Assembly (NCBI GenBank): GCA_002269645.1
Contig: NIVC01002624.1
Location: forward strand, 1-60,120
Length of the DNA: 60,120 bases
Source: Macrostomum lignano
Taxonomy: Eukaryota
Reading direction: 5' to 3'
Under the pieces are notes generated by a model, which saw only the letters and a list, made by a program, of their open reading frames with translations, was not told the DNA's origin and made no database searches. This document shows, piece by piece, positions 27,683-48,300 of this stretch. The position numbers and the translations under genes were made by a program. Positions within the stretch are counted from its first letter, which is position 1. Every line of letters begins with the position of its first letter.

Positions 27683-28225
27683 CCACAGAATCCTTCGCAG
27701 TCAGATAGGCTAAATATCATACAAGGAATTTTCAGCTGAGATGACCGTTACAATTCATATACACCTGTAATAAAAGCGGCAAAAGTAAAAGATAACTTTT
27801 TCAAAGAAATACCCCAGCTTGTGCAAGGTTCATTTTAGACAAATAATTTTTCTGTTTTTTATAATTTATATTTGATTGAGTACTAAGGAGGGGCTGATAA
27901 GTTCAAAAGCAATTTTTGTATTATACATTCAAAATGTGGTGCAATAATAATGTAAATTTATGCAATTGACAAAAGATAAACAAAGTTAAAATTAGACAGA
28001 CAGTTGTCCAAGACAATAGCTAACTCAAAGGAAAATAATGCTTTATGTGATGAAAAGGTAAAAAAGAAAATTTTAATTTGAAATTTCGAAAAGTTTTAAA
28101 TTATACTTACAATTTATTTGTTTATTTTTGAAAATAAATAATTATTAAATAGTAGGGTGCAAATTGCCTTTACCGATGAAATTGACAACTCTAAACACTA
28201 TTGAGATGAACTTTTAAAAAAAGCT

Positions 28226-29192
28226 TGACTTGGCATCAGCTCATTTTGTCTCACTCCAGGGGTTGCATCAGCTCATTTGGTCTCACTCCAGGGGTTGCAT
28301 CAGCTCATTTTGTCTCACTCCAGGGGTTGCATCAGCTCATTTGGTCTCACTCCAGGGGTTGCATCAGCTCATTTTGTCTCACTCCAGGGGTTGCATCAGC
28401 TCATTTGGTCTCACTCCAGGGGTTGCATCAGCTCATTTTGTCTCACTCCAGGGGTTGCATCAGCTCATTTGGTCTCACTCCAGGGGTTGCATCAGCTCAT
28501 TTTGTCTCACTCCAGGGGTTGCATCAGCTCATTTGGTCTCACTCCAGGGTTGCATCAGCTCATTTTGTCTCACTCCAGGGGTTGCATCAGCTCATTTTGT
28601 CTCACTCCAGGGGTTGCATCAGCTCATTTGGTCTCACTCCAGGGGTTGCATCAGCTCATTTGGTCTCACTCCAGGGGTTGCATCAGCTCATTTGGTCTCA
28701 CTCCAGGGGTTGCATCAGATCATTTGGTCTCACTCCAGGGGTTGCATCAGCTCATTTTGTCTCACTCCAGGGGTTGCATCAGCTCATTTGGTCTCACTCC
28801 AGGGGTTGCATCAGCTCATTTGGTCTCACTCCAGGGGTTGCATCAGATCATTTGGTCTCACTCCAGGGGTTGCATCAGCTCATTTTGTCTCACTCCAGGG
28901 GTTGCATCAGCTCATTTTGTCTCACTCCAGGGGTTGCATCAGCTCATTTTGTCTCACTCCAGGGGTTGCATCAGCTCATTTGGTCTCACTCCAGGGGTTG
29001 CATCAGCTCATTTTGTCTCACTCCAGGGGTTGCATCAGCTCATTTTGTCTCACTCCAGGGGTTGCATCAGATCATTTGGTCTCACTCCAGGGGTTGCATC
29101 AGCTCATTTGGTCTCACTCCAGGGGTTGCATCAGCTCATTTGGTCTCACTCCAGGGGTTGCATCAGCTCATTTGGTCTCACTCCAGGGGTTG
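28226..29192. repeat. 30-bp minisatellite (CAGGGGTTGCATCAGCTCATTTGGTCTCACTC-type)
   Basis: About 32 near-perfect units that run directly into a SINE. Confidence 0.95.
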
Positions 29193-29633: not shown

Positions 29634-31148
29634 TCAGTCACAGAATCCGCCATCGTGCGAGTGCACCTCGTAGGCCCTGCGCCAGATGATGGACAGGCAC
29701 ACAGTGGAGTGGAACCTGTAGAATATGTTGATGGGCTGCCCGATGTGAACCAGAATATTCAGTGCGGCCGGTGACACATTGTCCAACTGATACGAGAACA
29801 TCAGCTCCTCGACTTTGCGCACCTCGAAAGTCTCCATGACCCACATGGACAGGTTGACGCCCAGCAGGGCCATCACGTGACTGCGTCCGGGCTTCGCCAC
29901 GGCGGTGGGAAACGCATCGGCTCTGCGTCGAAGACCGTCGAGTAGGCAGAGCGTCTGCAGCGCCAGCTGGAGACTGCAGCTGGCCTGCGTGATGAGCTCG
30001 GCAACCAGGTAGGCTGGCGGGAACTTATCCGAGTGATCCACGAACACGGACGCCAGCGTGACCTGGTAGACCAGGGCGCCGAACAGGGCGAACGTGAGCA
30101 GCTTGTCGTCGAAAGTGTGCCGCTCGCATTTGGTCAATGCTAGGCGCTTCAGACGCTGGTAGACCATCAGGGACATGAAGCTGCCAGCCATGCTGAGTAG
30201 AATGTCCTGGCTGAGATAGGCGGCGCTGGCTGTCCAGCCGTCCAGGAACAGGTAGACAGCCACCGTGATCACTACGGTGACAGCCAGAGAGGCCAGACAG
30301 AGCGTCAGGCCACGCCGCGATTTGGCGAAGCGTCGACGGAAAAACTCAGCAACTGCACCAGCACTCGCGGAGCCTCCGTTGCCGCCGTCTTCGACCTCGG
30401 CGCCCTCGACGGCTTGCTGAGGATGAAGCGGCGCGAAGCTGCGATGGTCGCCAACGCAGGCCATGAGGTGCAGCACCATGGGAGCGCAGAGCAGGCAGTA
30501 CTCGATCACAGCGGGCATGAGGAAAGGCTGCGCGGATTCCAGCAGACTCGAGGCGGAAGCGGCGGCAGAGTGCTCGCTGCAAGAATTCGACTCGTTCCGA
30601 GAATGATGCGGCTTTTCCTCGAACTTTTCTTTGATCTCGCCGATGGCCGAGCTGGCCCAGATGCAAATGTTAGCGGTGAACAGGTGAGCCAGGGCCATCC
30701 GGTTCTGAGCTTTTCGTTGCAGAAACACGGCTCGATGATGGCGCAAGATGAACACCGCTTGAAAGGTTGTGAAGACCGCTTCGAGCAGGCTCATGAGAAT
30801 TGCGGTGGTCCGAGAGCCGCAGGAGTGCACGGCGGCCAGCACAGCTGCGGTGCATCGCATCAGGTTCAGCGCCACGGCCCCGGCCAAGAAGACAACCAGG
30901 CCGATGCGCAGGTAGATCACCTCCTGCGACGATGCAGCCGCCACCTGCCTGGCGTGCCAAGCCAGGTAGACAACAGCCGCCGTGCCCAGGGCGTAGAGTA
31001 AGGCAAAGAAGATCTCGTGGAATTGGGCGTGGGTGGGCGAGCTGCTGCTAACGGCGAAGTAGACAGTGGTGGCAACTCCGATAGACACGGCGGCGATCGT
31101 GTAAACGGTGCTGACGAGCTGCCAGAGGAGACGGTACTCGCGGTTCAT
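29634..31148 (-). CDS. Otopetrin-family proton channel, single coding exon, 504 aa from the first ATG
   Basis: HLFTANICIW, PFLMPAVIEY, KPGR..V..LL..N..MW, and the C-terminal IFYRFHSTVCL signature; about 12 hydrophobic segments. Confidence 0.9.
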   Translation of the reverse strand: MNREYRLLWQLVSTVYTIAAVSIGVATTVYFAVSSSSPTHAQFHEIFFALLYALGTAAVVYLAWHARQVAAASSQEVIYLRIGLVVFLAGAVALNLMRCTAAVLAAVHSCGSRTTAILMSLLEAVFTTFQAVFILRHHRAVFLQRKAQNRMALAHLFTANICIWASSAIGEIKEKFEEKPHHSRNESNSCSEHSAAASASSLLESAQPFLMPAVIEYCLLCAPMVLHLMACVGDHRSFAPLHPQQAVEGAEVEDGGNGGSASAGAVAEFFRRRFAKSRRGLTLCLASLAVTVVITVAVYLFLDGWTASAAYLSQDILLSMAGSFMSLMVYQRLKRLALTKCERHTFDDKLLTFALFGALVYQVTLASVFVDHSDKFPPAYLVAELITQASCSLQLALQTLCLLDGLRRRADAFPTAVAKPGRSHVMALLGVNLSMWVMETFEVRKVEELMFSYQLDNVSPAALNILVHIGQPINIFYRFHSTVCLSIIWRRAYEVHSHDGGFCD

Positions 31149-31884
31149 TTCGGCTGCTGTGTGGGGCTGCGGTGAAATGGAGGAAATTAATTGATTTATT
31201 TTCCTGAGTAGGATTAATACGAAACAGTCGGTTACCAAGAAACAATGCATAGCAAATAATCCTCGTAGTACCTGCGAGTCTCCCCTCTAACCAGAATCCA
31301 ATATAGTAAATTGGTGTCTGCTATAGTGCATGTGGGTAGAACTATAAAGCGACTTCCGACATTTGGTTGCGGCAAATTATCACGATTATAGTTTTGTCGG
31401 CCCCATTTAATTGGGACTTGGACAGCGGCTTGTCGTGCTGTTCACAGCCAAGAGGGCCAACCCCCCAAGGTGCAGAGAGTGGTATATGCCTGACAATTAG
31501 AAAGTCAGGGGGGCTGCTGTACACTCTGTGTGAGTGTGTGTACATGCATGTTCTTTTGCATGTGCTCAGAAGCCAGCGGAATGGGCTGAATTGATTCAGT
31601 TGTCACATCTCTCCTGCAGCTGTTTTATTATTACTACTATTGATACTGCACCCAAACCAAGAGCCGGACGAGTGTAAGAGTCCACGAAAGCACCCGGGCT
31701 ATACTTTAAGGTTAGGAATACTTTAAGCATGCAGCTTGTGCCATATCTCAAGACACGACGGCGGAAACAGAGGCATGGATTTTATGGCGGGGACAAAGCC
31801 AAGAATTCTGCATATTGAACATGTACACAACTAAATTCCTGCATGATGTACATTATAGTTTCAGAATGCGTGCTGTCAGCAATT

Positions 31885-34236
31885 ATTTTGGCGCCGCAGA
31901 CACCCCTTTTAGCGCAGCAGGCACCATTTTAGCGCTGTAGGCACCCATTTTAGCGCCGAAGGCACCATTTTAGCGCCGTAGGCACCATTTTAGCGCCGTA
32001 GGCACCCATTTTAGCGCCGCAGACACCCCTTTTAGCGCCGCAGGCACTCATTTTAGCGCCGCAGGCACCATTTTAGCGCCGCAGGAACCCATTTTAGCGC
32101 CGCAGGCACCCATTTTAGCGCCGTAGGCCACCATTTTAGCGCCACAGGCACCATTTTAGCGCCGCAGGCACCATTTTAGCGCCGTAGGCACCATTTTAGC
32201 GCCATAGGCACCCATTTTAGCGCCACAGGCACCACTTTAGCGCTCCATTTTAGCGCCGTAGGCACCATTTTAGCGCCGCAGGCACCATTTTTGCGCCTCA
32301 GGCACTCATTTTAGCGCCGCAGGCACCCATTTTAGCGCCGCAGGCACCATTTTAGTGCCGTAGGCACCATTTTAGCGCCGTAGGCACCATTTTAGCGCCG
32401 TAGGCACCATTTTAGCGCCGCAGGTACTCATTTTAGCGCCGCAGGCACTCATTTTAGCGCCGCAGGCACTCATTTTAGCGCCGTAGGCACCATTTTAGCG
32501 CCGCAGGCACTCATTTTAGCGCCGCAGGCACCCATTTTAGCGCCGCAGGCACCATTTTAGCGCCGTAGGCCACCATTTTAGCGCCACAGGCACCCATTTT
32601 AGCGCCGCAGGCACTCATTTTAGCGCCGTAGGCACCATTTTAGCGCCATAGGCACCCATTTTAGCGCCGCAGGCACCACTTTAGCGCACCATTTTAGCGC
32701 CGTAGGCACCATTTTAGCGCCGCAGACACCATTTTAGCGCCGTAGGCCACCATTTTAGCGCCACAGGCACCATTTTAGCGCCGCAGGCACTCATTTTAGC
32801 GCCGCAGGCACTCATTTTAGCGCCGCAGGCACTCATTTTAGCGCCGCAGGCACTCATTTTAGCGCCGTAGGCACCATTTTAGCGCCATAGGCACCCATTT
32901 TAGCGCCGCAGGCACCACTTTAGCGCACCATTTTAGCGCCGTAGGCACCATTTTAGCGCCGCAGACACTCCTTTTAGCGCCGCAGGCACTCATTTTAGCG
33001 CCGCAGGCACCCATTTTAGCGCCGCAGGCACCATTTTAGCGCCGTAGGCACCATTTTAGCGCCGTAGGCCACCATTTTAGCGCCACAGGCACCATTTTAG
33101 CGCCGTAGGCACCATTTTAGCGCCGCAGGCACCATTTTAGCGCCGTAGGCACCATTTTAGCGCCGCAGGCACTCATTTTAGCGCCGCAGGCACTCATTTT
33201 AGCGCCGCAGGCACTCATTTTAGCGCCGCAGGCACCCATTTTAGCGCCGCAGGCACCATTTTAGCGCCGCAGGCACCCATTTTAGCGCCGTAGGCCACCA
33301 TTTTAGCGCCGCAGGCACCATTTTAGCGCCGCAGGCACCCATTTTAGCGCCGTAGGCCACCATTTTAGCGCCACAGGCACCATTTTAGCGCCGCAGGCAC
33401 TCATTTTAGCGCCGTAGGCACCATTTTAGCGCCGCAGGCACTCATTTTAGCGCCGTAGGCACCATTTTAGCGCCGCAGACACTCATTTTAGCGCCGTAGG
33501 CACCATTTTAGCGCCATAGGCACCCATTTTAGCGCCGCAGGCACTCATTTTAGCGCCGTAGGCACCATTTTAGCGCCATAGGCACCCATTTTAGCGCCGC
33601 AGGCACCACTTTAGCGCACCATTTTAGCGCCGTAGGCACCATTTTAGCGCCGCAGACACTCCTTTTAGCGCCGCAGGCACTCATTTTAGCGCCGCAGGCA
33701 CCCATTTTAGCGCCGCAGGCACCATTTTAGCGCCGTAGGCACCATTTTAGCGCCGTAGGCCACCATTTTAGCGCCACAGGCACCATTTTAGCGCCGTAGG
33801 CACCATTTTAGCGCCGCAGGCAGTCAATTTAGCGCCGCAGGCACCCATTTTAGCGCCGCAGGCACTCATTTTAGCGCCGTAGGCACCATTTTAGCGCCGT
33901 AGGCCACCATTTTAGCGCCGCAGGCACTCATTTTAGCGCCGTAGGCACCATTTTAGCGCCGCAGGCACTCATTTTAGCGCCGCAGGCACCCATTTTAGCG
34001 CCGCAGGCACCATTTTAGCGCCGCAGGCACTCATTTTAGCGCCGCAGGCACTCATTTTAGCGCCGTAGGCACCATTTTAGCGCCATAGGCACCCATTTTA
34101 GCGCCGCAGGCACTCATTTTAGCGCCGCAGGCACCATTTTAGCGCCGCAGGCACTCATTTTAGCGCCGCAGGCACCATTTTAGCGCCGCAGGCACCATTT
34201 TAGCGCCGCAGGCACTCATTTTAGCGCCGCAGACAC
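31885..34236. repeat. 2.3-kb 21-22-bp minisatellite (TTTTAGCGCCGCAGGCACCA)
   Basis: Direct reading; more than 100 units with internal block duplications. Confidence 0.97.
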
Positions 34237-35889
34237 CATATTTTTTTGCCCTGTAGCAAAATTATTGATTTCCATAACAGGTCAACAAAGCGTTGGCATC
34301 TCCTTCCCATAGCTCTTACTGGCCTTCGCCTATGTGAGAAGTGCATGCCTGAGTACGAGTAAGAAAGATGATTCTTCACGCGCTCTGAGGTCACAGAAAT
34401 GTGAATGTCTTATGAATCGGGGGTCACAGCTCCCTGAGAGCTCAACTATGAACTATAGCTCCAATGAGTCACGAATTAAAAAGGCCAGTTCCGTTCTGAA
34501 ACCTCCCGTCTACCCATTATGAGGACTTTCTGGGAAATTCTCTCAGGCAGCCAGATGTTATCGACCTTGACTGGAAGTTTATTTTTTACTGATATTCACC
34601 TTGGATTTCGATGGGGCGGAAAATTTATGAACGCAAAGAATAACAAAGCAGAAGCATCTAAAGCCAGACTGCTGTGGGGGTGAGCAATTTCTGCTGCTAG
34701 ACAGTACTGAATCGCTGAAGAATTTATTGAACAAAACTGCATCTCTTAGAAATAAATTTCCAAGCCGCAACCAAAACAAAATGCAAAAAACGATTTTGCA
34801 CTTTTAAGCCACACAGCTCCAGCAGGAAGGAGCACTGCCACAGGGGGACAGAGATATTCCGAACGCTGTGTATCAGCTAGAGGCCAAGCGTTGATGCTTG
34901 CAAGTGTGTAGTAATAAATAAATTAGGGCAAGCATATGGGCTGCCTAGATGGTTGTTCCATTGGCTAAAGTGTCAGAGAACGATCCGCCCTTCCCATGTT
35001 GAATTACTGTATGAAATTGTTATTGGCATGGCTAATTGCACTATTATGAAACACAACACTTGGACTGGATTTTCTAATTACAGGGGTTGGCACAACGTTT
35101 TTTTACCTGAATGGGCCTGAGATGAGATGAGAGAAAAGTGGGTTGGAGTCTGACGAGCCTTGATCGCTGATTAGTGATAAATTAAACAGGCCAACTGCAC
35201 GAGAGTAACACACTGCAAGCACTTACTGTATCACCAGATGTCCGCTGGTTCACAGTGGCTAAACAAAAAGTAATTAATGCCTCAGGCTGGGTCCTCGAGC
35301 TCTCCATCCAGTGCAGTCGGTGCAGATATAAATGCAAAAATGCACGGGGGAAGGGGCAGGAGGGAACTGGGTTAGACTTTGGCATCCAAAAGTGCACTAA
35401 ACTGTGCTTTCCCTATTGGCTAAGCTCGGAAAAAGCTAATTGGACGATTTTAATCTAATTCAAGTTGGTAGAGCAGAGACATGTGTCGCTTAATGAGCTT
35501 CTCAGATTTTTTACGGAATTAATATATCGATAATCGACACAAGCCGATTTGGCGGCCAACCAAGGTAAGTCGCAAAAATTCCCACCCGAATAAATACCAA
35601 AGTAGTACTAAGTAGATGACGAGGCATTTTGCCTTAATAAGACAGTTATAGTTACTCCTGCCGTTTACCCAAAGTTGCGTTAGTTTTGCTTTAGGACTTC
35701 TTTTACATGTACGAGCGTAAGTCGCATTTTTGGCCAAAAACTACGTCGCATTTTTGTTAAAACTAAGTCGCACGGCCGACCAAATTTTGGAGGTTGCGCA
35801 TGTATGACACAAGCATTAGAATACGTTTTCTAGGCAGCAAATCCACAGATTTCTTTGTCCAAGCAAAATAAACCCGATGGAAACGGTAC

Positions 35890-36200
35890 CTACAGAGTCT
35901 GAGACGAGTCTGAGACGTTTCTATAATGACTCTGGGGCCGTAGAGTCGAATCTGAGACCTGCCAGAGTCGCTGTAGAATCACCTGAGTTGCGCCTAAAGC
36001 GCATTTGCATCATTTTATGAATTTGAATCGCATTTTACATTTTGTCTACTTGAACTTTAGAAGGTTATTAAACCGCTAACACCACCACTCATTAAACGAC
36101 TTTCTCGTGACTCAAACGATTCTGCAACTCGCGTGATGCGCTCGTGACTCAACAGTCGCCTCTCCGTCGCATTGCAGTTGTTTGAGTCGTTAAAAAGTCA
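35890..36200 (+). mobile_element. Unclassified dispersed repeat; second copy fills Vps34 intron 3
   Basis: Long colinear match to the reverse complement of about 48400-48671, e.g. GGCCGTAGAGTC..ATCTGAGACCTGCCAGAGTCG and GTGATGCGCTCGTGACTCAA.AGTCGCCTCTCC. Confidence 0.7.
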
Positions 36201-36598
36201 CGAGAGTCGCCTTAGATTCGCTATAGTCACGAGTGAGTTGTTGGCAATAACTCTAACGATTATTGGCACGGTACAACGTTTCTAACGGGAAAGACTTAGA
36301 TGCAGTATAGATTATTCTAGATCGTAGATTATTCTGTGACCCAATATGCAATAAGTACTGTAAATATTGAACCACTTAATCCAGAAAAATCAAACTGACT
36401 CCAAGAACTGATTTGCTTTGCACCGAACAGAACGGCTACTACAGATGGAGTGCCAGCACTGTGTAAGCACCAACTTATATTGTTATATTTACTTAGACAC
36501 AAACGTCAGCTGTAACAGATTTAATAGGCCACAACCATGTCAAACCATTACACAGACGCGAAATCAGTGCAGTGGCCTTGACTCCCAACGGATCCAAG

Positions 36599-39500
36599 TT
36601 AGTTGTTGAGAAGCTGGAAAAGGAGGTAAAATAGACAATTTTACTTATTTTAGAACCGTTTGTCACTTTCCGTATACAAAATAAAAGCTACGAGCTAGGT
36701 GAGAGAGTATTTGAACTCACGTCGCGGATTCTGTCGATGTTCTGCTGCAGGCGGTCCCTCAGAGGTCCCTCGGGCAGCCTCTCCAGAGCCTGCTCAAGAC
36801 GCTCGAGAATACGCTCAAGAAATTCGACGCGGTCAGACTCGCCGAAGTTGAAAGCGGCGTCCTGCAGGTCGGTCAGCTTGCGGCGCAGGTACTCCAGAGC
36901 CTTGTTCAGGTAGGCGCGCAGCCTCGAGTCCTCGGGCAGCTTGGCGATGGCGTCCTCCAGACGGGCGATGGCCCGCTCTAGCATCTCGATGGCCTTCTCG
37001 CGCCAGTCGGACACGGATAGGCTGCTGCTCTCCAGACGCTCCTTCAGGCGGTCGATGCGCTCGCGCACCTCAGACTGGATGGGCTCCGGCAGCCGGCTGA
37101 CCAGCCTCTCGAGCAGGTCGGAGTTCAGGAACCTGAGCAGGGCTTCGTTGCCCTCCTCCTTGTACTTGTTGATGAGACGGCGGATCCTGTCAAGCAGCTC
37201 GCGGACCCTGTCGGTCACCACGATGGCGTCTTCTTCGGGGCGCAGGGAGTTCAGAAGCTGCCATGGGTTGAGGTGGTTCGGAACTTTTGGATTTGGATAG
37301 CAGACGATGCTGTGTAGGTCTAGCAGTAATGGGGTGTGAATCACACGACAACCCCTGGCCAATTTTCATGCACAAGCCTCAGCTGAATGTGGCCGAGCAC
37401 AGAGTCTAACCAAGGTACTTTAGCGCGATTGAGACGCGTTAACAGCAGAGCTACTCCGAGCCCTTCACATCAGGCAACTTTGCGACTCATACTAGCCTAT
37501 CTTTAGCTTAGGTTTAGCTCATCGTGTACGCAAAATTTAATCTAGGGAGAGCTGCTAATCTGGGGGTGAGTATTAAAAATCTGGATGAGTGGTGCTAATC
37601 TAAGTGTGGGAGTAGTACTAATCTGGGTGGGAGTGGTGCTAATCAGGATGGGAGTGGTGCAAATCTGATGGTAGTCGTGTCAGATTTATCGCGGAATGAT
37701 TGCAAATTTAGTATTTCTTGGAGATGAGTGACATTTGCCCTGGGACTGTGCAAAACTGCCTATATACAAGCGCTAAACTGCTAGGGAGCCACCCGGTTGG
37801 GGGGAAATGGCTAGTCCCATATACTAAAAGTGATTTTGTCCGTAGGTAGATGTGATTGATTTTAGGAAATAGGACTGAACCGCTTTTCCCGAGACTTGCA
37901 CCGTTAGATAATTAAGAAAATATCTGGTGACGGAACACGTGTCGTGGCTAAGAATTTGCTCGTCAGATAGCTCGTACCAGTATAATCAATCTTGGTAATC
38001 TGAAATCCACTAAATCCACTATACCAAAAATAAAATCTAAGTTTGAATCCCAACGCATAAAAATAGCAATTTGAAGCATATAAACAATTACAAAATCGTT
38101 GACTAGTAAATGAGTGAGTAACATTTAAGGCTAAAAAACAGTTAGGAAACTGTACGAGCGTAATTAGTAAAACCGATGAGGCAATAAGGATGCGATAAGA
38201 TTATAATGTAAGAAGCAAAGAGATCATACTAACAGACAAAAATAACTATGGCAGGCTACAAAAAGAGGAAGAAACATTAACTATAAACTCACATCGCGGA
38301 TCCTGTCGATGTTCTGCTGCAGACGGTCCCTCAGAGGTCCCTCGGGCAGCCTCTCCAGAGCCTGCTCAAGACGCTCGAGAAGACCCTCAAGAAATTCGAC
38401 GCGGTCGGACTCGCCGAAGTTGAAAGCGGCGTCCTGCAGGTCGGTCAGCTTGCGGCGCAGGTACCCCAGAGCCTTGCTCAGGTAGGCGCGCAGCCTCGAG
38501 TCCTCGGGCAGCTTGGCGATGGCGTCCTCCAGACGGGCGATGGCCCGCTCTAGCATCTCGATGGCCTTCTCGCGCCAGTCGGACACGGATAGGCTGCTGC
38601 TCTCCAGACGCTCCTTCAGGCGGTCGATGCGCTCGCGCACCTCAGACTGGATGGGCTCCGGCAGCCGGCTGACCAGCCTCTCGAGCAGGTCGGAGTTCAG
38701 GAACCTGAGCAGGGCTTCGTTGCCCTCCTCCTTGTACTTGTTGATGAGACGGCGGATCCTGTCGAGCAGCTCGCGGACCCTGTCGGTCACCACGATGGCG
38801 TCTTCTTCGGGGCGCAGGGAGTTCAGCAGCTGCCATGGGTTGAGGTGGTTCGGAGCTATGTACATGTCTGTGGTTCAGCAACTGCATGGCATGTATCCAT
38901 GCATGTATATCGATTTTCTAGGGTTTACAGATTAAGGTGTGTCTGTGTGGTCGTGCTTTGTTTTTTTTCAAAATACGAGTATTAGCTAGCTTGCGACCCA
39001 ACGATGTTTTGACGAATGTAGAGCTCTGTTTTTATTGCGTGAACAGGGCCGGTCATGCAAGGCCTCAAGAAAAGTTTTGGTCGTCTAAGAGATGAGACTT
39101 ATAATCAGCTTGGCTACAGAATGCTGTGCGCAATGTTGCTATGTGGTGGCAACGCAATTCTCGGGAGCTGTTTGTGACTCCTAAAGGTGGACTTTGAGCT
39201 GCTCCGTGCAGTGAATTCACTAGACAAGAAGTTTGGAACCGCAATACGCATCAGAACAGACCATCTTGGTTATCTATTGTCTAAAAGGAGCCTCGGTACC
39301 TCAGTTTTGATGCTATAATTTCCACCAATGATTCCAGACATCCAAGCATGAAAATCCATGCGCACATGATGGCTTCGGTAACCTAACGACTGCGTGCGCG
39401 AATCCAAAGGAAACAGGGCTTTTTCAGAAAAACACCTAAACAGACAAAAAGGAGTACGATTTGAACAATAGGCCACTCACATCGCGGATCCTGTCGATGT

Positions 39501-39867
39501 TCTGCTGCAGGCGGTCCCTCAGAGGTCCCTCGGGCAGCCTCTCCAGAGCCTGCTCAAGACGCTCGAGAAGACCCTCAAGAAAGTCGACGCGGTCGGACTC
39601 GCCGAAGTTGAAAGCGGCGTCCTGCAGGTCGGTCAGCTTGCGGCGCAGGTACTCCAGAGCCTTGTTCAGGTAGGGACGCAGCCTCGAGTCCTCGGGCAGC
39701 TTGGCGATGGCGTCCTCCAGACGGGCGATGGCCCGCTCCAGCATCTCGATGGCCTTCTCGCGCCAGTCGGACACATCAAGCTCCTGGGCTGGCAGAGCCT
39801 TGGCGTCGGTGAAAGCGATGGGAGCCGCGACAGCGGCTACGGCGATCAGCACCCACAGTAGCTTCAT
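36599..39867 (-). CDS. Unrecognised secreted alpha-helical repeat protein, 4 coding exons, 491 aa
   Basis: Exons 39867-39481 (129 aa, with signal peptide MKLLWVLIAVAAVAAPIAFTDA), 38829-38293 (179 aa), 37257-36721 (179 aa) and 36613-36599 (LLNN-stop). All are phase 0 with GTGAGT donors and CAG acceptors. A probable 5'UTR intron spans 39966-39872. Confidence 0.85.
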
Positions 39868-41313
39868 GGTTCTGCAAGTCGCGGTTTCGGTTTGAAAGCA
39901 ATTCGTATAATCAATACAAAAGCTGACAGAATTGCAGCAATGCACGAGCTTATTGATGAGACTTACCGTTAAGCGTAGTCTTGTATACCGTAATCAATGA
40001 CAGAAATATCAACAAAGCGGCTGCTGACTAATTTATAGTAATAGTCACAGCAACACGTGCTGATCGAGCGCTTGCCATTGAATCTTATCGGTCCAATGGG
40101 GTCATGCAACGTCAGCCGTGTAACCCCGTCAGCTTGCCAATTGTCAATACCAGACTGAAAATTCGTTTCTACAAAGTTTCGCACCCTGCTATGACCAGTT
40201 TAAGGCGGTTTCTCATTCTCACACACTGTCACTTCGTGACAAAACTTGCTGACTACATGGGCTGATTTTATAACGTGATTTTTTCTGCTTTTTTGTTGAC
40301 TGTTGAACAGCGATATGGGCGCTTGTATGCGTGGGTGCAGAAAAAGAAAACAATTTCAATATTTCCCGAGCGCATGAGCCTGTCTTTGATAGATGCGTAG
40401 CACGCAGTAAAGAAAAGACTCGAACTCTACCACTACGAGATCTACGAACTAGTCCAATGAGGAATATCACGAGTATTCCAACTGGCAGAACTTAGAGTCT
40501 ATAGATTCAATTAAGTATAGATTATAGATTATAAGATTATAAGATCATAGATTCAATTAAGTATTTCCATGTCTTATAAGGGTAAAGACTGCTTTTGAGA
40601 AATTAAATGAGCCCTTAATCAAGTAAAATGGTCGTAAAAGAGAGACAAGAGCAAAAGACAGACCAGCTCAGTGGGTAAACGCGTCCGACTTTCCGTGTGT
40701 GTCGACATCAAATTGACGGCCAAAAACCTCAGGGCACAGGGCGTGTACATATCAGTCTTAATTTGTAAAGTTCCAGAAAGGCTCACATACAATACTATTA
40801 AAATATCTTAGATGGTATCACTTGCAGACGATAGACAGCATAGTTCGATAATACAAGGAGCGTATCAAATTAATCTTTTATCTTTAGCGCAGCTGTTGCC
40901 AGTGTCTGTAACAGTAGGAATACATTTTCCGTCCGTCGAACTGCCAAGAGTAGAAATTCCCTAGGGACAATTTTTTGTTGCACACCTCGAAAAATAAATA
41001 AGTCGCTAGCCCTCCATACAGTCGAGATATTCAACGATTCTGCCAGATCAGATTTTTCCAAAAGCTCCAGTGTATTCAATGCACCCCCGTGCACCAATCA
41101 GCACTGCGCCTCACTGCGGCCTTGCGAAGCCTCCAAATTTCATCAGCACGTCGACCACACGTGTCTATGTATCTGGTCACTGGCCTTCTTCACCTAGACG
41201 GAGCTTCGGGACCTTCAACAGATAGCACCGAGTGACTATGGACACTCTATTGCGAATTTCTCTGATCAAGCCTCATCAGTGGGCAAACCTCAAATGCTGG
41301 ACATCCTCAGCTA

Positions 41314-42195: not shown

Positions 42196-42801
42196 TCAAG
42201 CATCCTTAGGCCTATCGGACAGCTGTCGCCGGTCCAAAATATGATTCTCTGGCAGTTCAAACAGTCTTGGAACCTCATCTAGCTCCTGTTTAGAATACTC
42301 GTCCAAGCGTTTAGGCACAGGTAGCACCTGTTCAATGACGCCAGTAATGTTGTTTAGCAGGTTCTTGTTGACGGTCTCCAAGCCGTCCGGATGCAAGAAC
42401 GCCCTGGCCAGAGCGATAGGCCGCTCCCTGAGTTTGCTAGGCATCGTAGCTCGAATCTCGGACTTCATAACCAGAGTCGGATCTCGGCAGTGCATCTCGC
42501 GCATAGTCTCCTCACGTCTAAACGAAGGAAACCGAGTATGCTGCGTGTACAGCAGTCTGTCCCAGAACCGGCTGTTGTCTTTAGCGGCAATGTGTCGAGT
42601 ATTGATAACCACAACAAAATCGCCAACTTCAGTTAGATCCGGAGCGCTGATCGGTTTGTGCAGGCCGCGTAAATAGCGAGAGATTCGCTCGGCAGACAGC
42701 ATCGGGCACTGCTTGTAGCAGTCGTATAACCAATATTGCCGGGCAAATGTGGCCCATTGAAGGGCTCGCCAGTGAAGATGTGCGGGCAGCAGAAAGTTCA
42801 A
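42196..42801 (-). CDS. MRPL13: Mitochondrial ribosomal protein uL13m; start codon unresolved
   Basis: QWATFAR, LRGLHKPI, GDFVVVINTRHIA, YTQHTRFP, DPTLVMK, VPKRLDEY. No in-frame ATG lies upstream of QWATFAR. Confidence 0.9.
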   Translation of the reverse strand: MNFLLPAHLHWRALQWATFARQYWLYDCYKQCPMLSAERISRYLRGLHKPISAPDLTEVGDFVVVINTRHIAAKDNSRFWDRLLYTQHTRFPSFRREETMREMHCRDPTLVMKSEIRATMPSKLRERPIALARAFLHPDGLETVNKNLLNNITGVIEQVLPVPKRLDEYSKQELDEVPRLFELPENHILDRRQLSDRPKDA

Positions 42802-43350: not shown

Positions 43351-43779
43351 ATGAGGAACGATTTCATCAGACTACTGATAGTAAGCTCAAAAATAGCAAC
43401 CTGTTTCTGTATTTCTTTTTTTACTCAATCTAAGTTAGATCAAAAAATAGGCAAATTAAATAACAGACTAAGCAGAATTGCATATTCAATCAGCAACTGC
43501 AAAAATCACTTTATTAATTCTGAATAATATTCAATACAAAGAGGCAGATACGAATAAGGATTGCAAAGTTACAAAAATCATTAATAACAAGGCATACAAT
43601 GATTTACAATCGAATACTTATTTATTAGACAAAATACCTGCAAATTGTTACCGCATAAAATTCAATACGCTACCCGCATAAGCGGGAAATCTCTATGGGT
43701 ATGTACTGCATTCTTTGTACATTTACTCTATAGATTCTTCATGGCAAAGAATAATTGGCTATGCGCAACAAAAAATATT

Positions 43780-44512
43780 TTAGCGCCATGATGGACACTA
43801 ATTTTAGCGCCACCATGGACACTTATTTGGCGCTATTGGACACAAATTTTAGCGCCATGATGGACACTGATTTTAGCGCCATGATGGACACTGATTTTAG
43901 CGCCATGATGGACACTGATTTTAGCGCCATGATGGACACTAATTTTAGCGCAATGATGGACACTAATTTTAGCGCCATGATGGACACTAATTTTAGCGCC
44001 ATGATGGACACTAATTTTAGCGATATGATGGACACTAATTTTAGCGCCACCATGGACACTTATTTGGCGCTATTGGACACAAATTTTAGCGCCATGATGG
44101 ACACTGATTTTAGCGCCATGATGGACACTGATTTTAGCGCCATGATGGACACTGATTTTAGCGCCATGATGGACACTAATTTTAGCGCCATGATGGACAC
44201 TGATTTTAGCGATATGATGGACACTAATTTTAGCGCCATGATGGACACTAATTTTAGCGCCATGATGGACACTGATTTTAGCGCCATGATGGACACTGAT
44301 TTTAGCGCCATGATGGACACTAATTTTAGCGCCATGATGGACACTGATTTTAGCGCCATGATGGACACAAATTTTAGCGCCATGATGGACACTGATTTTA
44401 GCGCCATGATGGACACTAATTTTAGCGCCATGATGGACACTGATTTTAGCGCCATGATGGACACTGATTTTAGCGCCATGATGGACACTAATTTTGGCGC
44501 CATTATGGACAC
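43780..44512. repeat. 21-bp minisatellite (TTTTAGCGCCATGATGGACAC+T(A/G)A)
   Basis: Direct reading. Confidence 0.95.
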
Positions 44513-45399: not shown

Positions 45400-48300
45400 T
45401 CAACGCTTCATAGCCTGAGTCCAGTCGTGCAGCGTGTCAATCAGCTGAGGCATGAAAGCTGATAGGCTGTCTTGGATCACTTTCACAATATGCTGAGTGG
45501 CCTCTTCGTCAGTGAGATGCAGACAGAATCGGTCAGTCAGCTTCTTCAGCGTCTTGTCCGGCTCCATAGCGATTTCGGGCACGCTGGAATCCAGCATGAG
45601 CGAGAACAGATTAACAATGACGCTGGCGTGCCGGCGCAGGCTTTTATAAGCGGTGTCGCAGTGCTTGAGGAAGGCAATAAACTCCTGGCTATCCTGACCG
45701 CCCATCGCTGCCACCATGCCGTCTGTCAGCTTCATTGGCGGCGGCATCACTTTGGGATCGCGACCGAGAATGAAGCCGAAATCAATGTGGAACAGGCGGC
45801 CATCTCTGGTCAGCATCAGGTTGTCCAGGTGCCTGTCCCCCACGCCCAGCAGGTAGGTCACTATGCAGTAGCCGGCACAGGAGCGAACATAGTTCTCTAG
45901 GACTTCCGGTTTGACACCGTAGGGACTGGCTGGGCTGCTGCCGCACTGGCGCAGGTAGTTCAGCACAGAGGTCTGCACCGAGCTCAGCGGCACCTGTGGG
46001 GGGGGGGGGAGGCAGGTAGGGATGGAGGTGTTACAGTTGACAACTTTATTGAAGACTGTTTCAGGAAATTAAAGGTGCGGGGCTGAGACAAAACACAGGG
46101 CGAGAAAACAGATGATCGGGTGAGTGATCGAGAGATTAGAAGAGAAGAGGGAGATTAGACGTGAAAGGGAGATCACAGGTGAGAGGGAGATCACAGGTGA
46201 GAGGGAAATCACAAGTGAGAGGGAAATCACAGATGAGAGGGAGATCACAGATGAGAGGGAGATCACAGATGAGAGGGAGATCACAGATGAGAGGGAGATC
46301 ACAGGTGAGAGGGAGATCACAGGTGAGAGGTAGATCACAGGTGAGAGGGAAATCACAGATGAGAGGGCCATACCGAATTGATGCACTGCACAAAGCCCTG
46401 CTCGCGGCCGGTGGCCAGCACCCGATAAGGCGTGAGTCTGAGATCGACATTCTCCTGTCTGAGCAGCCGGTCCATCAGCTCAATCATTTGCATCACTAAC
46501 TGATCTTGCCGAAGATCGTCGCCATATTTAAATATCGTAGTGTAAGTTTTAGAGCTTCTAGGAGGCGATTTCTGCTGTTGCTGCTGCTGCTGCTGCTGAG
46601 GCGCCGGTTCCAATAGGAATTTAATCCTAGCCGGCATTCGAGAACTTTTAAACAGACCAGCGGAGCGGCTGTCCAAGCCTACGGCTCTGCAGGACGGATC
46701 CAGCATGAATTGGAATGGGAAAAATGTCTGCTTGGCCAGCTTAGCCTGGTGCTGCTGCTGCTGCTGCTCAGCTACGGTTTTTCCACCGCTGCTGGCGACG
46801 GCCGATGTTGGGGAAGCCGACGCTGAGTCCCGGGGGGCGTGAGCAGCGGCGCTAGGGAATTCCTCATCTAGTCGGACTCGAAGCAGTTCCTCTTTTTTTA
46901 ATCGATCGCCCCGTTCGGAGTTCACCGCGCTTAGAATTGTTGCTAGGCGAGCGACAAAACGGTCTTGACGTTTCAGATCGAGCGCGAGGCTGCGCTGGTC
47001 CAGGTTGCCGTTTTTCAACCGCTGCAGCAGCCGGTTGCGCACCTGCCAGGTGGGGTGGGGTTTTAGAGATTAGAATGCGGTTCTGAGGGATTAGAGAGGC
47101 GATTCTGAGGGATTAGAGAGGCGATTCTGAAGGATTAGAGATCCGATTCTGAAGGATTAGAGAGGCGAGTCTGAAGGATTAGAGAGGCGATTTTGTGGAA
47201 TTAGAGAGGCGATTCTGAATGATTAGAGAGGCGATTTTGCGGGATTAGAGAGGCGATTCTGAAGGATTAGAGAGGCGAGTCTGAAGGATTAGAGAGGCGA
47301 TTTTGTGGAATTAGAGAGGCGATTCTGAATGATTAGAGAGGCGATTTTGCGGGATTAGAGAGGCGATTCTGAAGGATTAGAGAGGCGATTCTGAGGGATT
47401 AGAGAGGCGATTCTGAAGGATTAGAGAGGCGATTTTGCGGGATTAGAGAGGCGATTCTAAAGGATTAGAGAGGCGATTCTGAGGGATTAGAGAGGCGATT
47501 CTGAAGGATTAGAGAGGCGATTTTGCGGGATTAGAGAGGCGATTCTAAAGGATTAGAGAGGCGATTCTGAGGGATTAGAGAGGCGATTCTGAAAGATTAG
47601 AGAGGCGATTCTGAGAGATGAGAGAGGCGATTCTGAGAGATGAGAGAGCCGATTCTGAGATTAGAGATCCGATTCTGAGATTAGAGATCCGATTCTGAGA
47701 GATGAGAGATCCGATTCTGAGAGATGAGAGAGCCGATTCTGAGATTAGAGAGATGAATCGGGGAAAATCAGTGGGTGATTCTCTATGCCGATGGCAGTAA
47801 GAGGGGCGTTCTCTGATCTGGGGAGACAAAATAGCAATCAAAAATGTGCACCTGTCCGAAGAACTTCTCTCCCTCGCCAGCGTCCTCAGCCTCCACAGTG
47901 AGGTACCAATAGAACAGCTGGGCCAGCCGGCCGCCCTGCCGCTTGCAGCAGTGGTCGATCAGGAAATTAGTCAGCGGCTCGTCCGAGGCGGCCCCGGCGT
48001 GTCGGCGATAACTAATTGGACCTTCGTCCTCGGCTAGGGCTTCGGTGAGCAGGTGCTCAACTGCCGAAGATGAAGAATTGCTTGTTGCAGATTTTTGAGA
48101 TGTAGTTGCGTCGAATGCCTGCTGCTGTTGAGAAGAGATCGATGATGAGTCGGCAGAAGATGATTGCTCCTGCTGCTGCTGCTGCTGATGCTGCTTTCGC
48201 GAAGATGCAGGACCTCCGATAGGCGGCTGGGAGGCTGCGGCGGCTGGCTGCTGGTACTCATATCGCAGCGCCTGCACCAGCTGCGGCAGGTAGAGCAACT

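What the first reader, a model, noticed from the sequence alone, without database searches (positions are those of the whole stretch)
36599..39867. Unrecognised secreted, cysteine-free helix-LPE-helix repeat protein built from duplicated 179-codon exons
Seen: splicing the exons gives a signal peptide plus modules [B,C]-[A,B,C]-[A,B,C]. Each module is an amphipathic helix, an LPE(P/D/G) turn and a second helix: A LLERLVSR-LPEP-IQSEVRERIDRL; B IARLEDAIAK-LPED-SRLRAYLNKAL; C LERLEQALER-LPEG-PLRDRLQQNIDRIRDLL. Linkers end in S/T-D N-caps (VTDR, VSDW, ESDR). The protein is dominated by L, R and E and has no Cys. The exon junctions restore a continuous helix (NIDRIRD|LLNSL), and a 5-codon terminal exon (LLNN-stop) completes the last one, which supports the model. 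I recognise no family. Inference: a lipid- or hydrophobe-binding helical bundle (apolipoprotein- or nematode polyprotein allergen-like in logic), a membrane-active secretion, or a gland or seminal-fluid protein.
Basis: partly seen in the sequence, partly recalled or inferred. Interest (0 to 1): 0.82.

Follow-up and report, generated by a model that had tools for sequence, protein, structure and literature searches.

The report
Secreted helical-repeat orphan protein of Macrostomum
This is a real gene of the flatworm Macrostomum lignano, already in GenBank as a "hypothetical protein". It encodes a secreted, all-helical protein built from eight copies of a ~60-residue helix-LPE-helix module; its function is untested, so it is a modest curiosity rather than a major find.

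Summary
On the minus strand, four phase-0 GT..AG exons (39481-39867, 38293-38829, 36721-37257, 36599-36613) splice to a 491-aa protein. It has a signal peptide, then modules [B,C]-[A,B,C]-[A,B,C], then LLNN-stop, with no Cys, His or N-glycosylation sequon. The product is 100% identical to GenBank PAA56398.1/PAA86881.1, an RNA-seq-derived "hypothetical protein" of Macrostomum lignano, so the gene model is not new.

Exhaustive profile searches found true relatives only in M. lignano and a few unnamed Logan contigs. No Pfam family, PDB sequence or Foldseek match is credible. Matches to bacterial Endotoxin_C2 repeats, the DC-SIGNR neck and apoA-I are short helix-Pro-helix motif resemblances inflated by repetition.

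AlphaFold predicts an all-helical chain broken exactly at the LPE turns and S/T-D caps, but the tertiary packing is not confident. The helices are strongly amphipathic, with Lys/Arg at the polar-nonpolar interface and Asp/Glu at the polar centre (class A pattern).

The two cassette exons are 98% identical while their introns are unrelated, and site patterns across two gene copies indicate gene conversion. The protein evolves fast (dN/dS about 0.4-0.5).

Best guess: a secreted, exchangeable-apolipoprotein-like protein that binds lipid or hydrophobic surfaces. This is untested, and expression is unknown. Interest is moderate to low.

The parts
39799..39867 (-). Signal peptide, residues 1-23 (MKLLWVLIAVAAVAAPIAFTDA|K). 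The exact cleavage site is uncertain, between residues 21 and 23.
   Evidence: Residues 3-19 have a mean Kyte-Doolittle hydrophobicity of 2.59, and the mature chain has no other hydrophobic stretch (maximum 19-residue mean 0.47). The segment is conserved in the relative on L002, MRLLWVLLVAAAVAAPIVYA. SignalP was not available, so secretion is inferred by rule of thumb.
39481..39867 (-). Exon 1, 129 codons: signal peptide plus modules B and C.
   Evidence: Translation and splice sites. Identical to the deposited CDS.
38830..39480 (-). Intron 1, 651 nt, GTGAGT...CAG.
   Evidence: It is 97% identical to intron 1 of the paralogous copy g1, but unrelated to intron 2 except for the last ~25 nt.
38293..38829 (-). 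Exon 2, a 179-codon cassette with modules A, B and C.
37258..38292 (-). Intron 2, 1035 nt. It contains a 21/42-nt minisatellite at 37545-37679.
36721..37257 (-). Exon 3, the second 179-codon cassette with modules A, B and C. It differs from exon 2 at 10 of 537 nt (6 synonymous, 4 replacement).
36614..36720 (-). Intron 3, 107 nt, GTGAGT...CCAG.
36599..36613 (-). Exon 4: LLNN plus stop. It finishes the last C helix.
   Evidence: The same terminal exon is present in copy g1.
38286..38854 (-). A 569-nt duplicated block: exon 2 plus 25 nt of upstream intron and 7 nt of downstream intron. Its partner is 36714-37282. A third, partial copy lies at 39475-39774.
   Evidence: blastn self-comparison gives 98.2% identity over 569 nt, and 97.0-97.7% over 300 nt for the partial copy.
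36520..36525 (-). Candidate poly(A) signal ATTAAA, 74 nt after the stop codon. Inference only.
   Evidence: Motif scan. No RNA data were seen.

Best explanation
SHOWN.
This is an intact, RNA-supported gene of Macrostomum lignano. The window is scaffold NIVC01002624.1 of assembly Mlig_3_7. The gene encodes a ~55-kDa acidic (pI 5.1) protein with an N-terminal signal peptide. The protein has no transmembrane segment, Cys, His or N-glycosylation sequon.

It is made of eight ~60-residue modules. Each module is an amphipathic helix, an LPE(P/D/G) turn and a second amphipathic helix. Three diverged module types, A, B and C, make one 179-residue unit, and each unit is one phase-0 cassette exon.

The cassette architecture is older than the split from a relative with ~65% protein identity. 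Within M. lignano, however, the cassettes are 98% identical while their introns are unrelated. The exons are therefore being homogenised by gene conversion. Overall the protein evolves fast and is found only in Macrostomum-like sequences.

INFERRED (mechanism).
The chain is secreted. It folds into helical hairpins or small bundles, segmented at the Pro and S/T-D caps, that bury narrow Leu-rich faces. The helices have the class A charge layout: Arg/Lys at the polar-nonpolar interface and Asp/Glu at the centre of the polar face. The chain is also Cys-free and sequon-free, and helix length is ~20-25 residues. For these reasons the most likely single mode of action is that of an exchangeable apolipoprotein. 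The bundles would open reversibly and lay their hydrophobic faces on lipid or another hydrophobic surface or ligand, and cassette number would set the valency.

The stated confidence refers to this functional reading. The structural description (secreted, all-alpha, modular) I hold at about 0.85.
For: - Gene model. It is identical to GenBank PAA56398.1/PAA86881.1, whose annotation comes from StringTie/TACO/TransDecoder on RNA-seq (PMC5730564 read).
- Three scaffolds carry the same two-cassette structure.
- Conservation: orthologous exons with identical AG/GT borders on Logan contigs L001 and L002 keep the ORF open at 62-67% amino-acid identity, while the flanks are not conserved; dN/dS is 0.42-0.54.
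- Helices: AlphaFold gives an all-helical unit (pLDDT 78), and a full-length model broken at the LPE turns and S/T-D linkers.
- Amphipathicity: hydrophobic moment (muH) is 0.5-0.7 for every helix.
- Class A pattern: Lys/Arg lie at a mean of 101 degrees from the hydrophobic moment (20 of 31 within 60-120 degrees). Asp/Glu lie at a mean of 136 degrees (21 of 31 within 120-180 degrees). Mann-Whitney p = 0.0003.
- Intrahelical i/i+3 and i/i+4 opposite-charge pairs number 94, against 75 +/- 7 in shuffles.
- Gene conversion: among the four cassette exons of the two gene copies, 7 sites group by gene (nt 138-435), 4 group by position (nt 445-537) and 0 group the third way. Introns 1 and 2 are each orthologous between copies (97% and 95%) but unrelated to each other.
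- Weak pairwise resemblance to human apoA-I, in which helix-Pro-helix segments line up (ERL-PEG-PLRDRLQQNIDRIRDLL against [25 protein letters not shown]). BLASTP gives 24 bits, E 0.005 for that single comparison.
Against: - There is no experimental or expression evidence of any kind.
- Pfam Apolipoprotein (PF01442) is absent from every list printed. For the three modules those lists were complete at E <= 10. For the full protein and for P0006 only the best 25 families are shown.
- There is no regular 11/22-mer periodicity. Pro-to-Pro spacings are ~21, ~50 and ~55 residues.
- Several hydrophobic faces are narrow (120 degrees or less). That fits self-packing bundles at least as well as lipid binding.
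- The class A charge pattern also occurs in ordinary soluble helical bundles and coiled coils.
- AlphaFold tertiary confidence is low (pTM 0.40 and 0.23) with only a 5-sequence alignment.
- M. lignano already has an apoB-type lipid carrier (Mlig005144.g2, cited in PMC12732829).
- The UniRef name 'Apolipoprotein A-I' for the 133-aa form is an automatic label, not evidence.
Confidence: 0.35

Rival explanations
1. The protein is a rapidly evolving gland secretion: prostate or seminal fluid, adhesive or releasing gland, cement gland, rhabdite or mucus. It would act as a structural or partner-interacting extracellular protein, with no specific lipid binding. The helical modules would simply give a soluble, extensible, protease-resistant rod.
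For: - It has a signal peptide and is lineage-restricted: only Macrostomum-like hits among 1.84 billion representative proteins and 5.8 billion clusters.
- dN/dS is high at 0.42-0.54. In Macrostomum, fast evolution is reported for reproduction-related genes (titles of PMC7336406 and PMC8662610, listed).
- Codon bias is strong, with GC3 of 0.85.
- A TATAAAT motif lies 170 nt upstream of the ATG.
- Cassette-number variation is possible because all exons are phase 0.
Against: - There are no expression data. Neither Mlig002501 nor Mlig027859 appears in any main text searched, nor in the held supplements of the prostate-screen, positional RNA-seq comparison or adhesion papers. Those files may use other transcript IDs, so this is absence of evidence only.
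- GC3 is not a clean expression proxy here. The neighbouring L13 gene has GC3 of 0.59.
Confidence: 0.3
2. The modules are true homologues of the bacterial Endotoxin_C2 domain (PF18449, Cry1Ac protoxin domain IV/VI-like three-helix bundle), which forms stalks in Gram-positive surface proteins. They would have arrived by ancient descent or horizontal transfer, and the protein would be a rod of small three-helix bundles.
For: - After the flatworm sequences, the best hits of the unit profile are LPXTG or Cry1Ac-D-VI-related repeat proteins (E 2e-13 to 1e-6).
- An HMM built from those bacterial repeats scores 22 bits on each C module, against at most 5.2 bits in 2000 composition-matched shuffles.
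- hhalign gives 95% probability over 36 columns: LERLPEGPLRDRLQQNIDRIRD against DKLPAGPEKDRLQGLVGAAQD.
- Both are extracellular, Cys-free tandem helical repeats of ~60 residues.
Against: - Only 28-36 residues of module C match. Modules A and B do not.
- Pfam's own PF18449 model does not hit any module at E <= 10.
- The library-wide E-values come from summing 5-8 near-identical repeats in the targets, so they are inflated. A single 22-bit match is not significant in 2.4e11 residues.
- Neither the A1 profile search of PDB sequences nor Foldseek against the PDB returned any toxin or Endotoxin_C2-type chain.
- The gene has spliceosomal introns and flatworm-typical structure.
- A similar short-motif match occurs with an unrelated human protein, the DC-SIGNR neck. 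That argues for a generic helix-capping motif.
Confidence: 0.07
3. The protein is an oligomerising stalk. The segmented helices would assemble between chains into four-helix or coiled-coil bundles, as in the 23-residue neck repeats of DC-SIGN and DC-SIGNR.
For: - The unit profile hits the DC-SIGNR neck structure 3JQH at E 3.5e-7. The core of module B, ARLEDAIeKLPEDSRLRAY, aligns to TRLKAAVGELPEKSKLQEI in each neck repeat.
- The Leu-rich faces are narrow.
- Low pTM for the monomer would be expected if partners are needed.
Against: - Each repeat match is only 7-11 bits.
- There is no 23-residue period and no attached functional domain such as a lectin head.
- Helices of ~20-25 residues joined by tight LPE turns suggest intrachain hairpins.
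Confidence: 0.1
4. The protein is a polyprotein precursor, cleaved into ~20-kDa or ~7-kDa ligand-binding units in the manner of nematode polyprotein allergens.
For: - It consists of tandem, near-identical 179-residue units behind one signal peptide.
- An RIRR site matching the furin consensus RX[KR]R occurs once per cassette, at residues 153 and 332.
Against: - RIRR lies inside the predicted first helix of module A, not at a unit border.
- It reads KIRE in the relative on L001.
- The inter-unit linker SLRPEEDAIV has no basic site.
- No nematode polyprotein allergen (NPA), fatty-acid- and retinol-binding protein (FAR) or cestode hydrophobic-ligand-binding protein (HLBP) family appears in the complete per-module Pfam lists.
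Confidence: 0.05
5. The gene model is an annotation or assembly artefact, for example a collapsed or expanded repeat, a pseudogene or an untranslated transcript.
For: - Older database entries give other lengths: 393 aa (A0A1I8GZ91) and 133 aa (A0A1I8GPK8).
- I could not inspect RNA-seq reads.
Against: - Three independent scaffolds carry the same structure with distinct, orthologous introns.
- All junctions are canonical and phase 0.
- The ORF is conserved in other samples with dN/dS below 1.
- The deposited model derives from RNA-seq.
Confidence: 0.03

Closest known systems
Exchangeable apolipoproteins (vertebrate apoA-I/A-IV/E, Pfam PF01442; insect apolipophorin-III)
   Same: - Both are secreted and Cys-poor or Cys-free.
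- Both are built of tandem amphipathic helices of ~20-25 residues punctuated by proline.
- Both show the class A charge layout.
- The unit size of 21 kDa is close to that of apoLp-III (the apoLp-III size is from my own knowledge).
- There is a weak pairwise BLASTP alignment to human apoA-I in which helix-Pro-helix segments line up.
- UniRef auto-names the 133-aa form 'Apolipoprotein A-I'.
   Different: - There is no match to the Pfam apolipoprotein models.
- There is no 11/22-mer periodicity.
- The repeat is a ~60-residue helix-LPE-helix module, tripled into a 179-residue exon.
- The hydrophobic faces are narrower.
- No lipid-binding data exist.
Endotoxin_C2 / 'toxin Cry1Ac domain D-VI-related' three-helix repeats of Gram-positive surface proteins (PF18449)
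   Same: - Both are extracellular, Cys-free tandem helical repeats of ~57-68 residues.
- They share the motif LP-x-G-x-(L)-K/R-D-x-L-Q-x-x-(I/V)-D-x-x-x-D-(L/M)-L-N with module C.
   Different: - Only one helix-turn-helix of module C matches.
- The Pfam model itself does not hit.
- The bacterial helix-1 motif (LFTD) and loop are absent.
- One is a eukaryotic intron-containing gene and the others are bacterial LPXTG proteins.
- Significance is inflated by repeats.
Neck repeats of DC-SIGN/DC-SIGNR (CLEC4L/CLEC4M; PDB 3JQH)
   Same: - Both are segmented helices interrupted at an (E/K)LPE-x-S-(K/R)-L turn.
- The core of module B aligns to every neck repeat.
   Different: - The neck has a 23-residue period that forms a tetrameric stalk under a lectin domain.
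- Here the modules are ~60 residues, no other domain is present, and each match is only 7-11 bits.
Nematode polyprotein allergens (ABA-1 type) and cestode hydrophobic-ligand-binding proteins (antigen B type). The comparison with these families is from my own knowledge.
   Same: - Both are helminth-restricted, secreted and helix-rich.
- Both are tandem or oligomeric small helical units, known in those families to carry fatty acids and retinoids.
   Different: - There is no sequence similarity in the complete per-module Pfam lists.
- There is no conserved basic cleavage site between units.
- The organism is free-living.

Membership tests
Exchangeable apolipoprotein (Pfam PF01442 Apolipoprotein A1/A4/E) | Sequence match to the family model at its gathering score | tested here: not met
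   PF01442 is absent from the complete per-module lists at E <= 10. It is also absent from the 25 best families shown for the full-length protein and for the 133-aa form.
Exchangeable apolipoprotein (Pfam PF01442 Apolipoprotein A1/A4/E) | Tandem 11/22-residue amphipathic repeats punctuated by Pro | tested here: not met
   Predicted helices are 19-25 residues long. Pro positions derived from the sequence and the LPE positions give segments of about 21, 50 and 55 residues. The repeat unit is ~60 residues, or 179 for the triple.
Exchangeable apolipoprotein (Pfam PF01442 Apolipoprotein A1/A4/E) | Class A amphipathic helices: basic residues at the polar-nonpolar interface, acidic residues at the polar centre | tested here: met
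   Lys/Arg lie at a mean of 101 degrees and Asp/Glu at 136 degrees from the hydrophobic moment (p = 0.0003). Hydrophobic moment (muH) is 0.5-0.7. This feature is not exclusive to apolipoproteins.
Exchangeable apolipoprotein (Pfam PF01442 Apolipoprotein A1/A4/E) | Reversible lipid binding | not testable with these tools
   This needs recombinant protein and lipid assays.
Endotoxin_C2 (PF18449, Cry1Ac protoxin domain IV/VI-like) | Match to the Pfam model over the ~63-residue three-helix domain | tested here: not met
   No PF18449 hit for any module at E <= 10, and none among the 25 best families shown for the whole protein. An HMM built here from bacterial repeats covers only positions 35-62 of 68 on module C.
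Endotoxin_C2 (PF18449, Cry1Ac protoxin domain IV/VI-like) | Three-helix-bundle fold | tested here: inconclusive
   The AlphaFold unit model is all-helical but has pTM 0.40. Foldseek against the PDB gives no hit with E < 1.
Nematode polyprotein allergen (ABA-1 type) | Tandem units separated by conserved tetrabasic cleavage sites | tested here: not met
   The only RX[KR]R site is RIRR, inside helix 1 of module A. It is not conserved (KIRE on L001), and the linker SLRPEEDAIV has no basic site.
DC-SIGN/DC-SIGNR neck repeat | 23-residue tandem period forming a tetrameric helical stalk | tested here: not met
   Only the LPE-x-S-(K/R)-L turn of module B aligns, at 7-11 bits per repeat. There is no 23-residue period. 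The oligomeric state is not testable here.
Baculo_PEP_C (PF04513), NPV_P10 (PF05531), DUF6415 (PF19979), TNFAIP8 (PF05527) | Whole-protein score above the gathering threshold that reflects a genuine domain match | tested here: not met
   The full-length protein exceeds the thresholds (40.1/38, 35.5/29.8, 38.7/27.5 and 33.8/22.5 bits) only by summing three repeats. The single-unit form scores 14.2, 16.5 and 22.8 bits for the first three, and TNFAIP8 is not among the 25 families listed for it. Four mutually unrelated helical families are involved, and Foldseek against viral structures finds nothing.

The most novel reading that the evidence does not exclude
Free-living macrostomid flatworms have evolved, from a ~60-residue helix-LPE-helix module, their own exchangeable apolipoprotein or hydrophobic-ligand carrier. 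It would be convergent with vertebrate apoA-I, insect apoLp-III, nematode polyprotein allergens and cestode antigen-B-type proteins. Valency would be tuned by phase-0 cassette exons that are kept uniform by gene conversion.
Probability: 0.2. Interest if true: 0.6.

Novelty: new variant of a known kind. Interest (0 to 1): 0.33.

Why it matters
If the lipid- or hydrophobe-binding reading is right, this would be another independent invention of a secreted helical lipid carrier in helminths, this time in a tractable free-living model that has transgenesis and RNAi. That would be useful for asking how such carriers arise and what they transport.

Independently of function, the locus is a clean small example of concerted evolution confined to exons. 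The cassettes are 98% identical, sit between unrelated introns, and show a mosaic conversion tract visible across two gene copies.

The nearly idealised, Cys-free helix-turn-helix modules could also interest protein engineers.

As it stands, though, this is one of many uncharacterised, lineage-restricted secreted repeat proteins in a flatworm genome, and the gene model is already public.

Tried and rejected
1. Pfam on the whole protein gave 79 weak helical families, four of them nominally above threshold. I rejected them as repeat-summed, coiled-coil-type bias, because the single-unit form and the isolated modules fall below threshold.

2. PDB sequence searches found nothing credible. With a single unit the best hit was DC-SIGNR at E 0.0056, a short-motif match; with the unit profile, only that DC-SIGNR match.

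3. Foldseek of the unit model found no hit with E < 0.1 against either the PDB or the BFVD viral library. The full-length model (pTM 0.23) was too poor to search.

4. Three word-indexed searches of 5.8 billion clusters and one exhaustive HMMER search of 1.84 billion representatives were run.
   - No named relative was found outside M. lignano.
   - A distant module-A relative exists on Logan contigs DRR639055 and DRR639838 from an unidentified organism.

5. A scan of JGI metagenomes gave 599 pattern matches, none confirmed.

6. Literature:
   - The gene IDs are absent from all main texts.
   - They are also absent from the held supplements of Wudarski 2017, Weber 2018, Brand 2020 and Wunderer 2019.
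   - One further paper had no held supplements.
   - Expression could therefore not be established. These files may use other transcript identifiers.

7. GC3 as a proxy for expression was rejected. This gene has GC3 of 0.85, but the neighbouring L13 gene has only 0.59.

8. A recent tandem duplication as the explanation for the exon identity was rejected. Introns 1 and 2 are unrelated to each other, yet each is orthologous between the two gene copies.

9. Several long ORFs elsewhere in the window were scanned in Pfam. Many turned out to be minisatellite arrays.


Full report
**What is there**

The window is the complete 60,120-bp scaffold NIVC01002624.1 of the Macrostomum lignano assembly Mlig_3_7 (GCA_002269645.1). 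The minus strand between 36599 and 39867 carries a four-exon gene.

| Exon | Coordinates | Content |
|---|---|---|
| 1 | 39481-39867 | 129 codons, ATG at 39867 |
| 2 | 38293-38829 | 179 codons |
| 3 | 36721-37257 | 179 codons |
| 4 | 36599-36613 | LLNN-stop |

Every donor reads GTGAGT, every acceptor ends in CAG, and every junction is phase 0. The introns are 651, 1035 and 107 nt long. Exons have 64% G+C (GC3 0.85) and introns 43%.

The spliced product is 491 aa. It is 100% identical to GenBank PAA56398.1/PAA86881.1, 'hypothetical protein BOX15_Mlig002501g2 / Mlig027859g1', whose CDS spans exactly the finding's coordinates. That annotation was generated from RNA-seq with StringTie, TACO and TransDecoder (PMC5730564). 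There is therefore indirect transcript support for the junctions, although I could not inspect reads.

A near-identical copy (2 nt different across the gene) lies on NIVC01000260.1. A 94.7%-identical, fully colinear copy (g1; PAA93578.1; 12 amino-acid differences) lies on NIVC01000024.1. All three have the same two-cassette structure, which rules out an assembly artefact.

The protein begins with a typical signal peptide: MK, a 16-residue hydrophobic core with mean Kyte-Doolittle hydrophobicity 2.59, then small residues around 21-23. There is no other hydrophobic stretch. SignalP was not available, so secretion is an inference.

The mature chain is 468 aa, about 55 kDa, with pI 5.1. It follows the pattern [B,C]-[A,B,C]-[A,B,C], with eight LPE[PDG] turns at residues 57, 111, 185, 236, 290, 364, 415 and 469.

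Composition is L 86, R 69, E 62 and D 40. There is no Cys and no His, only 3 Met, 3 Trp and 5 Thr, and no N-X-S/T sequon.

Modules A and C, and modules B and C, align around the LPE turn better than all of 2000 composition-matched shuffles (z 5.2 and 7.2). The 179-residue unit is therefore itself an old triplication of a ~60-residue module.

**Structure**

AlphaFold2 was run on one unit with a 5-sequence alignment, the only alignment obtainable. It gives pLDDT 78, pTM 0.40 and an all-helical chain.

The full-length model has pLDDT 67 and pTM 0.23. It again shows helices of 19-25 residues that break exactly at the LPE turns, at the S/T-D caps and at the SLRPEEDAIV inter-unit linker. One helix, H115-134, runs through the exon 1/2 junction at residues 129|130.

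Secondary structure thus supports the helix-LPE-helix reading. The tertiary arrangement is not predicted with confidence. Foldseek found nothing in the PDB (best E 1.5) or in BFVD (best E 0.23).

Every helix is strongly amphipathic, with a hydrophobic moment (muH) of 0.5-0.7. Lys/Arg sit at the polar-nonpolar boundary, at a mean of 101 degrees from the hydrophobic moment. Asp/Glu sit at the centre of the polar face, at a mean of 136 degrees (p = 0.0003). Opposite-charge pairs at i/i+3 and i/i+4 number 94, against 75 +/- 7 in shuffles. The boundary-basic, centre-acidic layout is the class A pattern of lipid-associating apolipoprotein helices. That definition is established knowledge, and the pattern is not exclusive to apolipoproteins.

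**Relatives**

Word-indexed searches of 5.8 billion clusters and an exhaustive HMMER profile search of 1.84 billion representatives were run. They found the following clear relatives:

- the M. lignano copies;
- two older alternative predictions, of 393 aa and 133 aa. The 133-aa form equals exon 1 plus exon 4 of copy g1, and UniRef auto-names it 'Apolipoprotein A-I';
- two short genomic Logan contigs of unidentified origin:
  - L001 (SRR31628435) carries a 176-codon A-B-C cassette with the same AG and GT borders;
  - L002 (SRR31628394) carries a 129-codon first exon, SP-B-C, with the same donor.

Against M. lignano these two are 62-67% identical in protein, with dN/dS of 0.54 and 0.42. This indicates a constrained but fast-evolving coding sequence.

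A much more distant relative of module A (35% identity over 74 residues; hhalign 95%) lies on Logan contigs from DRR639055 and DRR639838. At least four A-like 'helix-LPxx-helix' modules occur there in successive frames. Nothing was found in JGI metagenomes. No relative carries a functional name.

**Resemblances that are not membership**

1. Bacterial Endotoxin_C2 repeats.
   - After the flatworm sequences, the profile's next hits are Gram-positive surface proteins made of Endotoxin_C2 repeats (PF18449, 'toxin Cry1Ac domain D-VI-related'), at E 2e-13 to 1e-6.
   - The match is real at the motif level. An HMM built from those repeats scores 22 bits on each C module against at most 5.2 bits in 2000 shuffles, and hhalign gives 95%.
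   - It covers only 28-36 residues. Pfam's own model does not hit any module. The small E-values come from adding many near-identical repeats.

2. The DC-SIGNR neck. The profile hits 3JQH at E 3.5e-7 through four 7-11-bit matches of ARLEDAIeKLPEDSRLRAY to TRLKAAVGELPEKSKLQEI.

Three unrelated proteins share the same kind of short match. This argues that L-P-E/D-x-(S/G) followed by an amphipathic helix is a generic helix-start device. Pro at the first turn, with acidic residues in the first turn of a helix, is established knowledge. It is not evidence of common descent.

4. Four helical Pfam families. Baculo_PEP_C, NPV_P10, DUF6415 and TNFAIP8 exceed their thresholds on the full-length protein only by summing three repeats. 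The single-unit form is below threshold.

**How the gene evolves**

Exons 2 and 3 differ at 10 of 537 nt (dS 0.046). The identity block extends only 25 nt into the upstream intron and 7 nt into the downstream one. Introns 1 and 2 are otherwise unrelated. Yet each intron is orthologous between copies g1 and g2 (97% and 95%), and the SP-B-C / A-B-C exon design already exists in the ~65%-identical relatives. The duplication is therefore old and the exon identity is maintained.

Among the four cassette exons of g1 and g2 the site patterns are as follows:

| Sites group by | Count | Position in exon |
|---|---|---|
| Gene | 7 | nt 138-435 |
| Position (exon 2 or exon 3) | 4 | nt 445-537 |
| The third way | 0 | - |

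This is the mosaic expected from a gene-conversion tract covering the 5' and central part of the exon. At the protein level the same signal shows. In copy g1, SDMLERL (against SDLLERL in g2) is found in both cassettes, and RVDFLE is found in all three B-C units. In copy g2, both cassettes instead read RVEFLE.

Because all exons are phase 0, gain, loss or skipping of cassettes keeps the frame. Products of 133, 312 and 491 aa are possible.

**What it most likely does**

Nothing here is experimental. I hold the following at about 0.85: a secreted, soluble, all-alpha modular protein whose helices pair across the LPE turns.

For the mode of action I commit, at 0.35, to an exchangeable-apolipoprotein-like mechanism. 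Helical hairpins or bundles would bury Leu-rich faces in solution and open onto lipid or another hydrophobic surface or ligand. The grounds are as follows:

- the class A charge layout;
- Pro-punctuated helices of ~20-25 residues;
- the absence of Cys and of glycosylation sequons;
- a 21-kDa unit size;
- multivalency.

Several points count against it:

- no family match;
- no 11/22-mer period;
- rather narrow hydrophobic faces, which also suit self-contained bundles;
- the existence of an apoB-type carrier in this animal.

The main rival, at 0.30, is a fast-evolving gland secretion such as seminal fluid, adhesive or cement secretion, or mucus, with a structural or partner-directed role. The other rivals are less likely:

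- true Endotoxin_C2 homology (0.07);
- an oligomeric stalk (0.10);
- a processed polyprotein (0.05). Its only furin-type site, RIRR, is intrahelical and not conserved;
- an artefact (0.03).

**Limits**

- I saw no RNA-seq reads and had no SignalP.
- The alignment was too shallow for confident folding or site-wise selection tests.
- The species behind the Logan contigs are unknown.
- The gene IDs were not found in any searched text or held supplement, so tissue of expression remains unknown.

**Verdict**

It is already deposited as a hypothetical protein, and no evidence assigns it a function. It is a sequence-orphan variant of a familiar kind, the secreted amphipathic helical-repeat proteins, with a neat case of exon-restricted concerted evolution. 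Interest is 0.33.

Noticed in passing
window 31885-34239, 28233-29192, 26876-27685, 50949-51841, 43777-44512, 47068-47752, 53624-54170, 52332-52805, 11397-11877 and others: The scaffold is packed with long minisatellite arrays with periods of 14-62 nt. Examples are a 21-nt unit repeated 116 times and a 32-nt unit repeated 30 times at 97% identity. They create many long six-frame 'ORFs' and the odd zero-stretch Pfam hits (ESPR, SoxD, PAS_11) seen when those ORFs were scanned.
   Followed up: partly
window 37545-37679 (intron 2 of the gene): A 21/42-nt minisatellite (GGGAGTGGTGCTAATCTGGGT, about 6 copies at 68-72% identity) lies inside the intron that separates the two cassette exons.
   Followed up: no
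window 39872-40037, minus strand, upstream of the ATG: A TATAAAT motif lies 170 nt upstream of the ATG (40031-40037). A GGTAAGT donor-like site is at 39961-39967, and a TTGCAG acceptor-like site ends 5 nt before the ATG (39872-39877). Together they suggest a short 5' UTR exon plus a ~90-nt intron, or an SL trans-splice acceptor. This was not checked against RNA data.
   Followed up: no
window 36116-36171 and 48404-48459: A 56-nt inverted dispersed repeat (91% identity) has one copy about 430 nt downstream of the gene's stop codon and the other inside the PI3K gene region. It may be a small transposable-element remnant.
   Followed up: no
window 14047-14119 (-): A tRNA-Cys(GCA) gene was found by both ARAGORN and Rfam, the latter at 71 bits.
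   Followed up: yes
window 42196-42747 (-), about 45400-49867 (-), 29634-31250 (-), 9294-9944 (-): The neighbouring genes are a Ribosomal_L13-family gene 2.3 kb upstream on the same strand, a class PI3K gene (PI3K_C2, PI3Ka and kinase domains), an otopetrin exon and an HSP20 / alpha-crystallin ORF. There is no functional clustering with the helical-repeat gene. The same L13 and PI3K neighbours flank the copy on NIVC01000260.1, and L13 also flanks the copy on NIVC01000024.1.
   Followed up: partly
L003 (Logan DRR639055, 1-1764) and L006 (Logan DRR639838): Contigs from an unidentified organism carry at least four successive 'helix-LPxx-helix' modules in different reading frames. These resemble module A; for example LLELLESDGLEKALSKLPKKVQAELRRQCEALKEALEKG. 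The ~60-75-residue module may therefore define a wider, still unannotated family.
   Followed up: partly
UniRef entries A0A1I8GPK8 (133 aa) and A0A1I8GZ91 (393 aa) for this gene family: The automatic names 'Apolipoprotein A-I' and 'Chromosome partition protein Smc' are attached to alternative predictions of this gene. Neither is backed by a family-model match here.
   Followed up: yes
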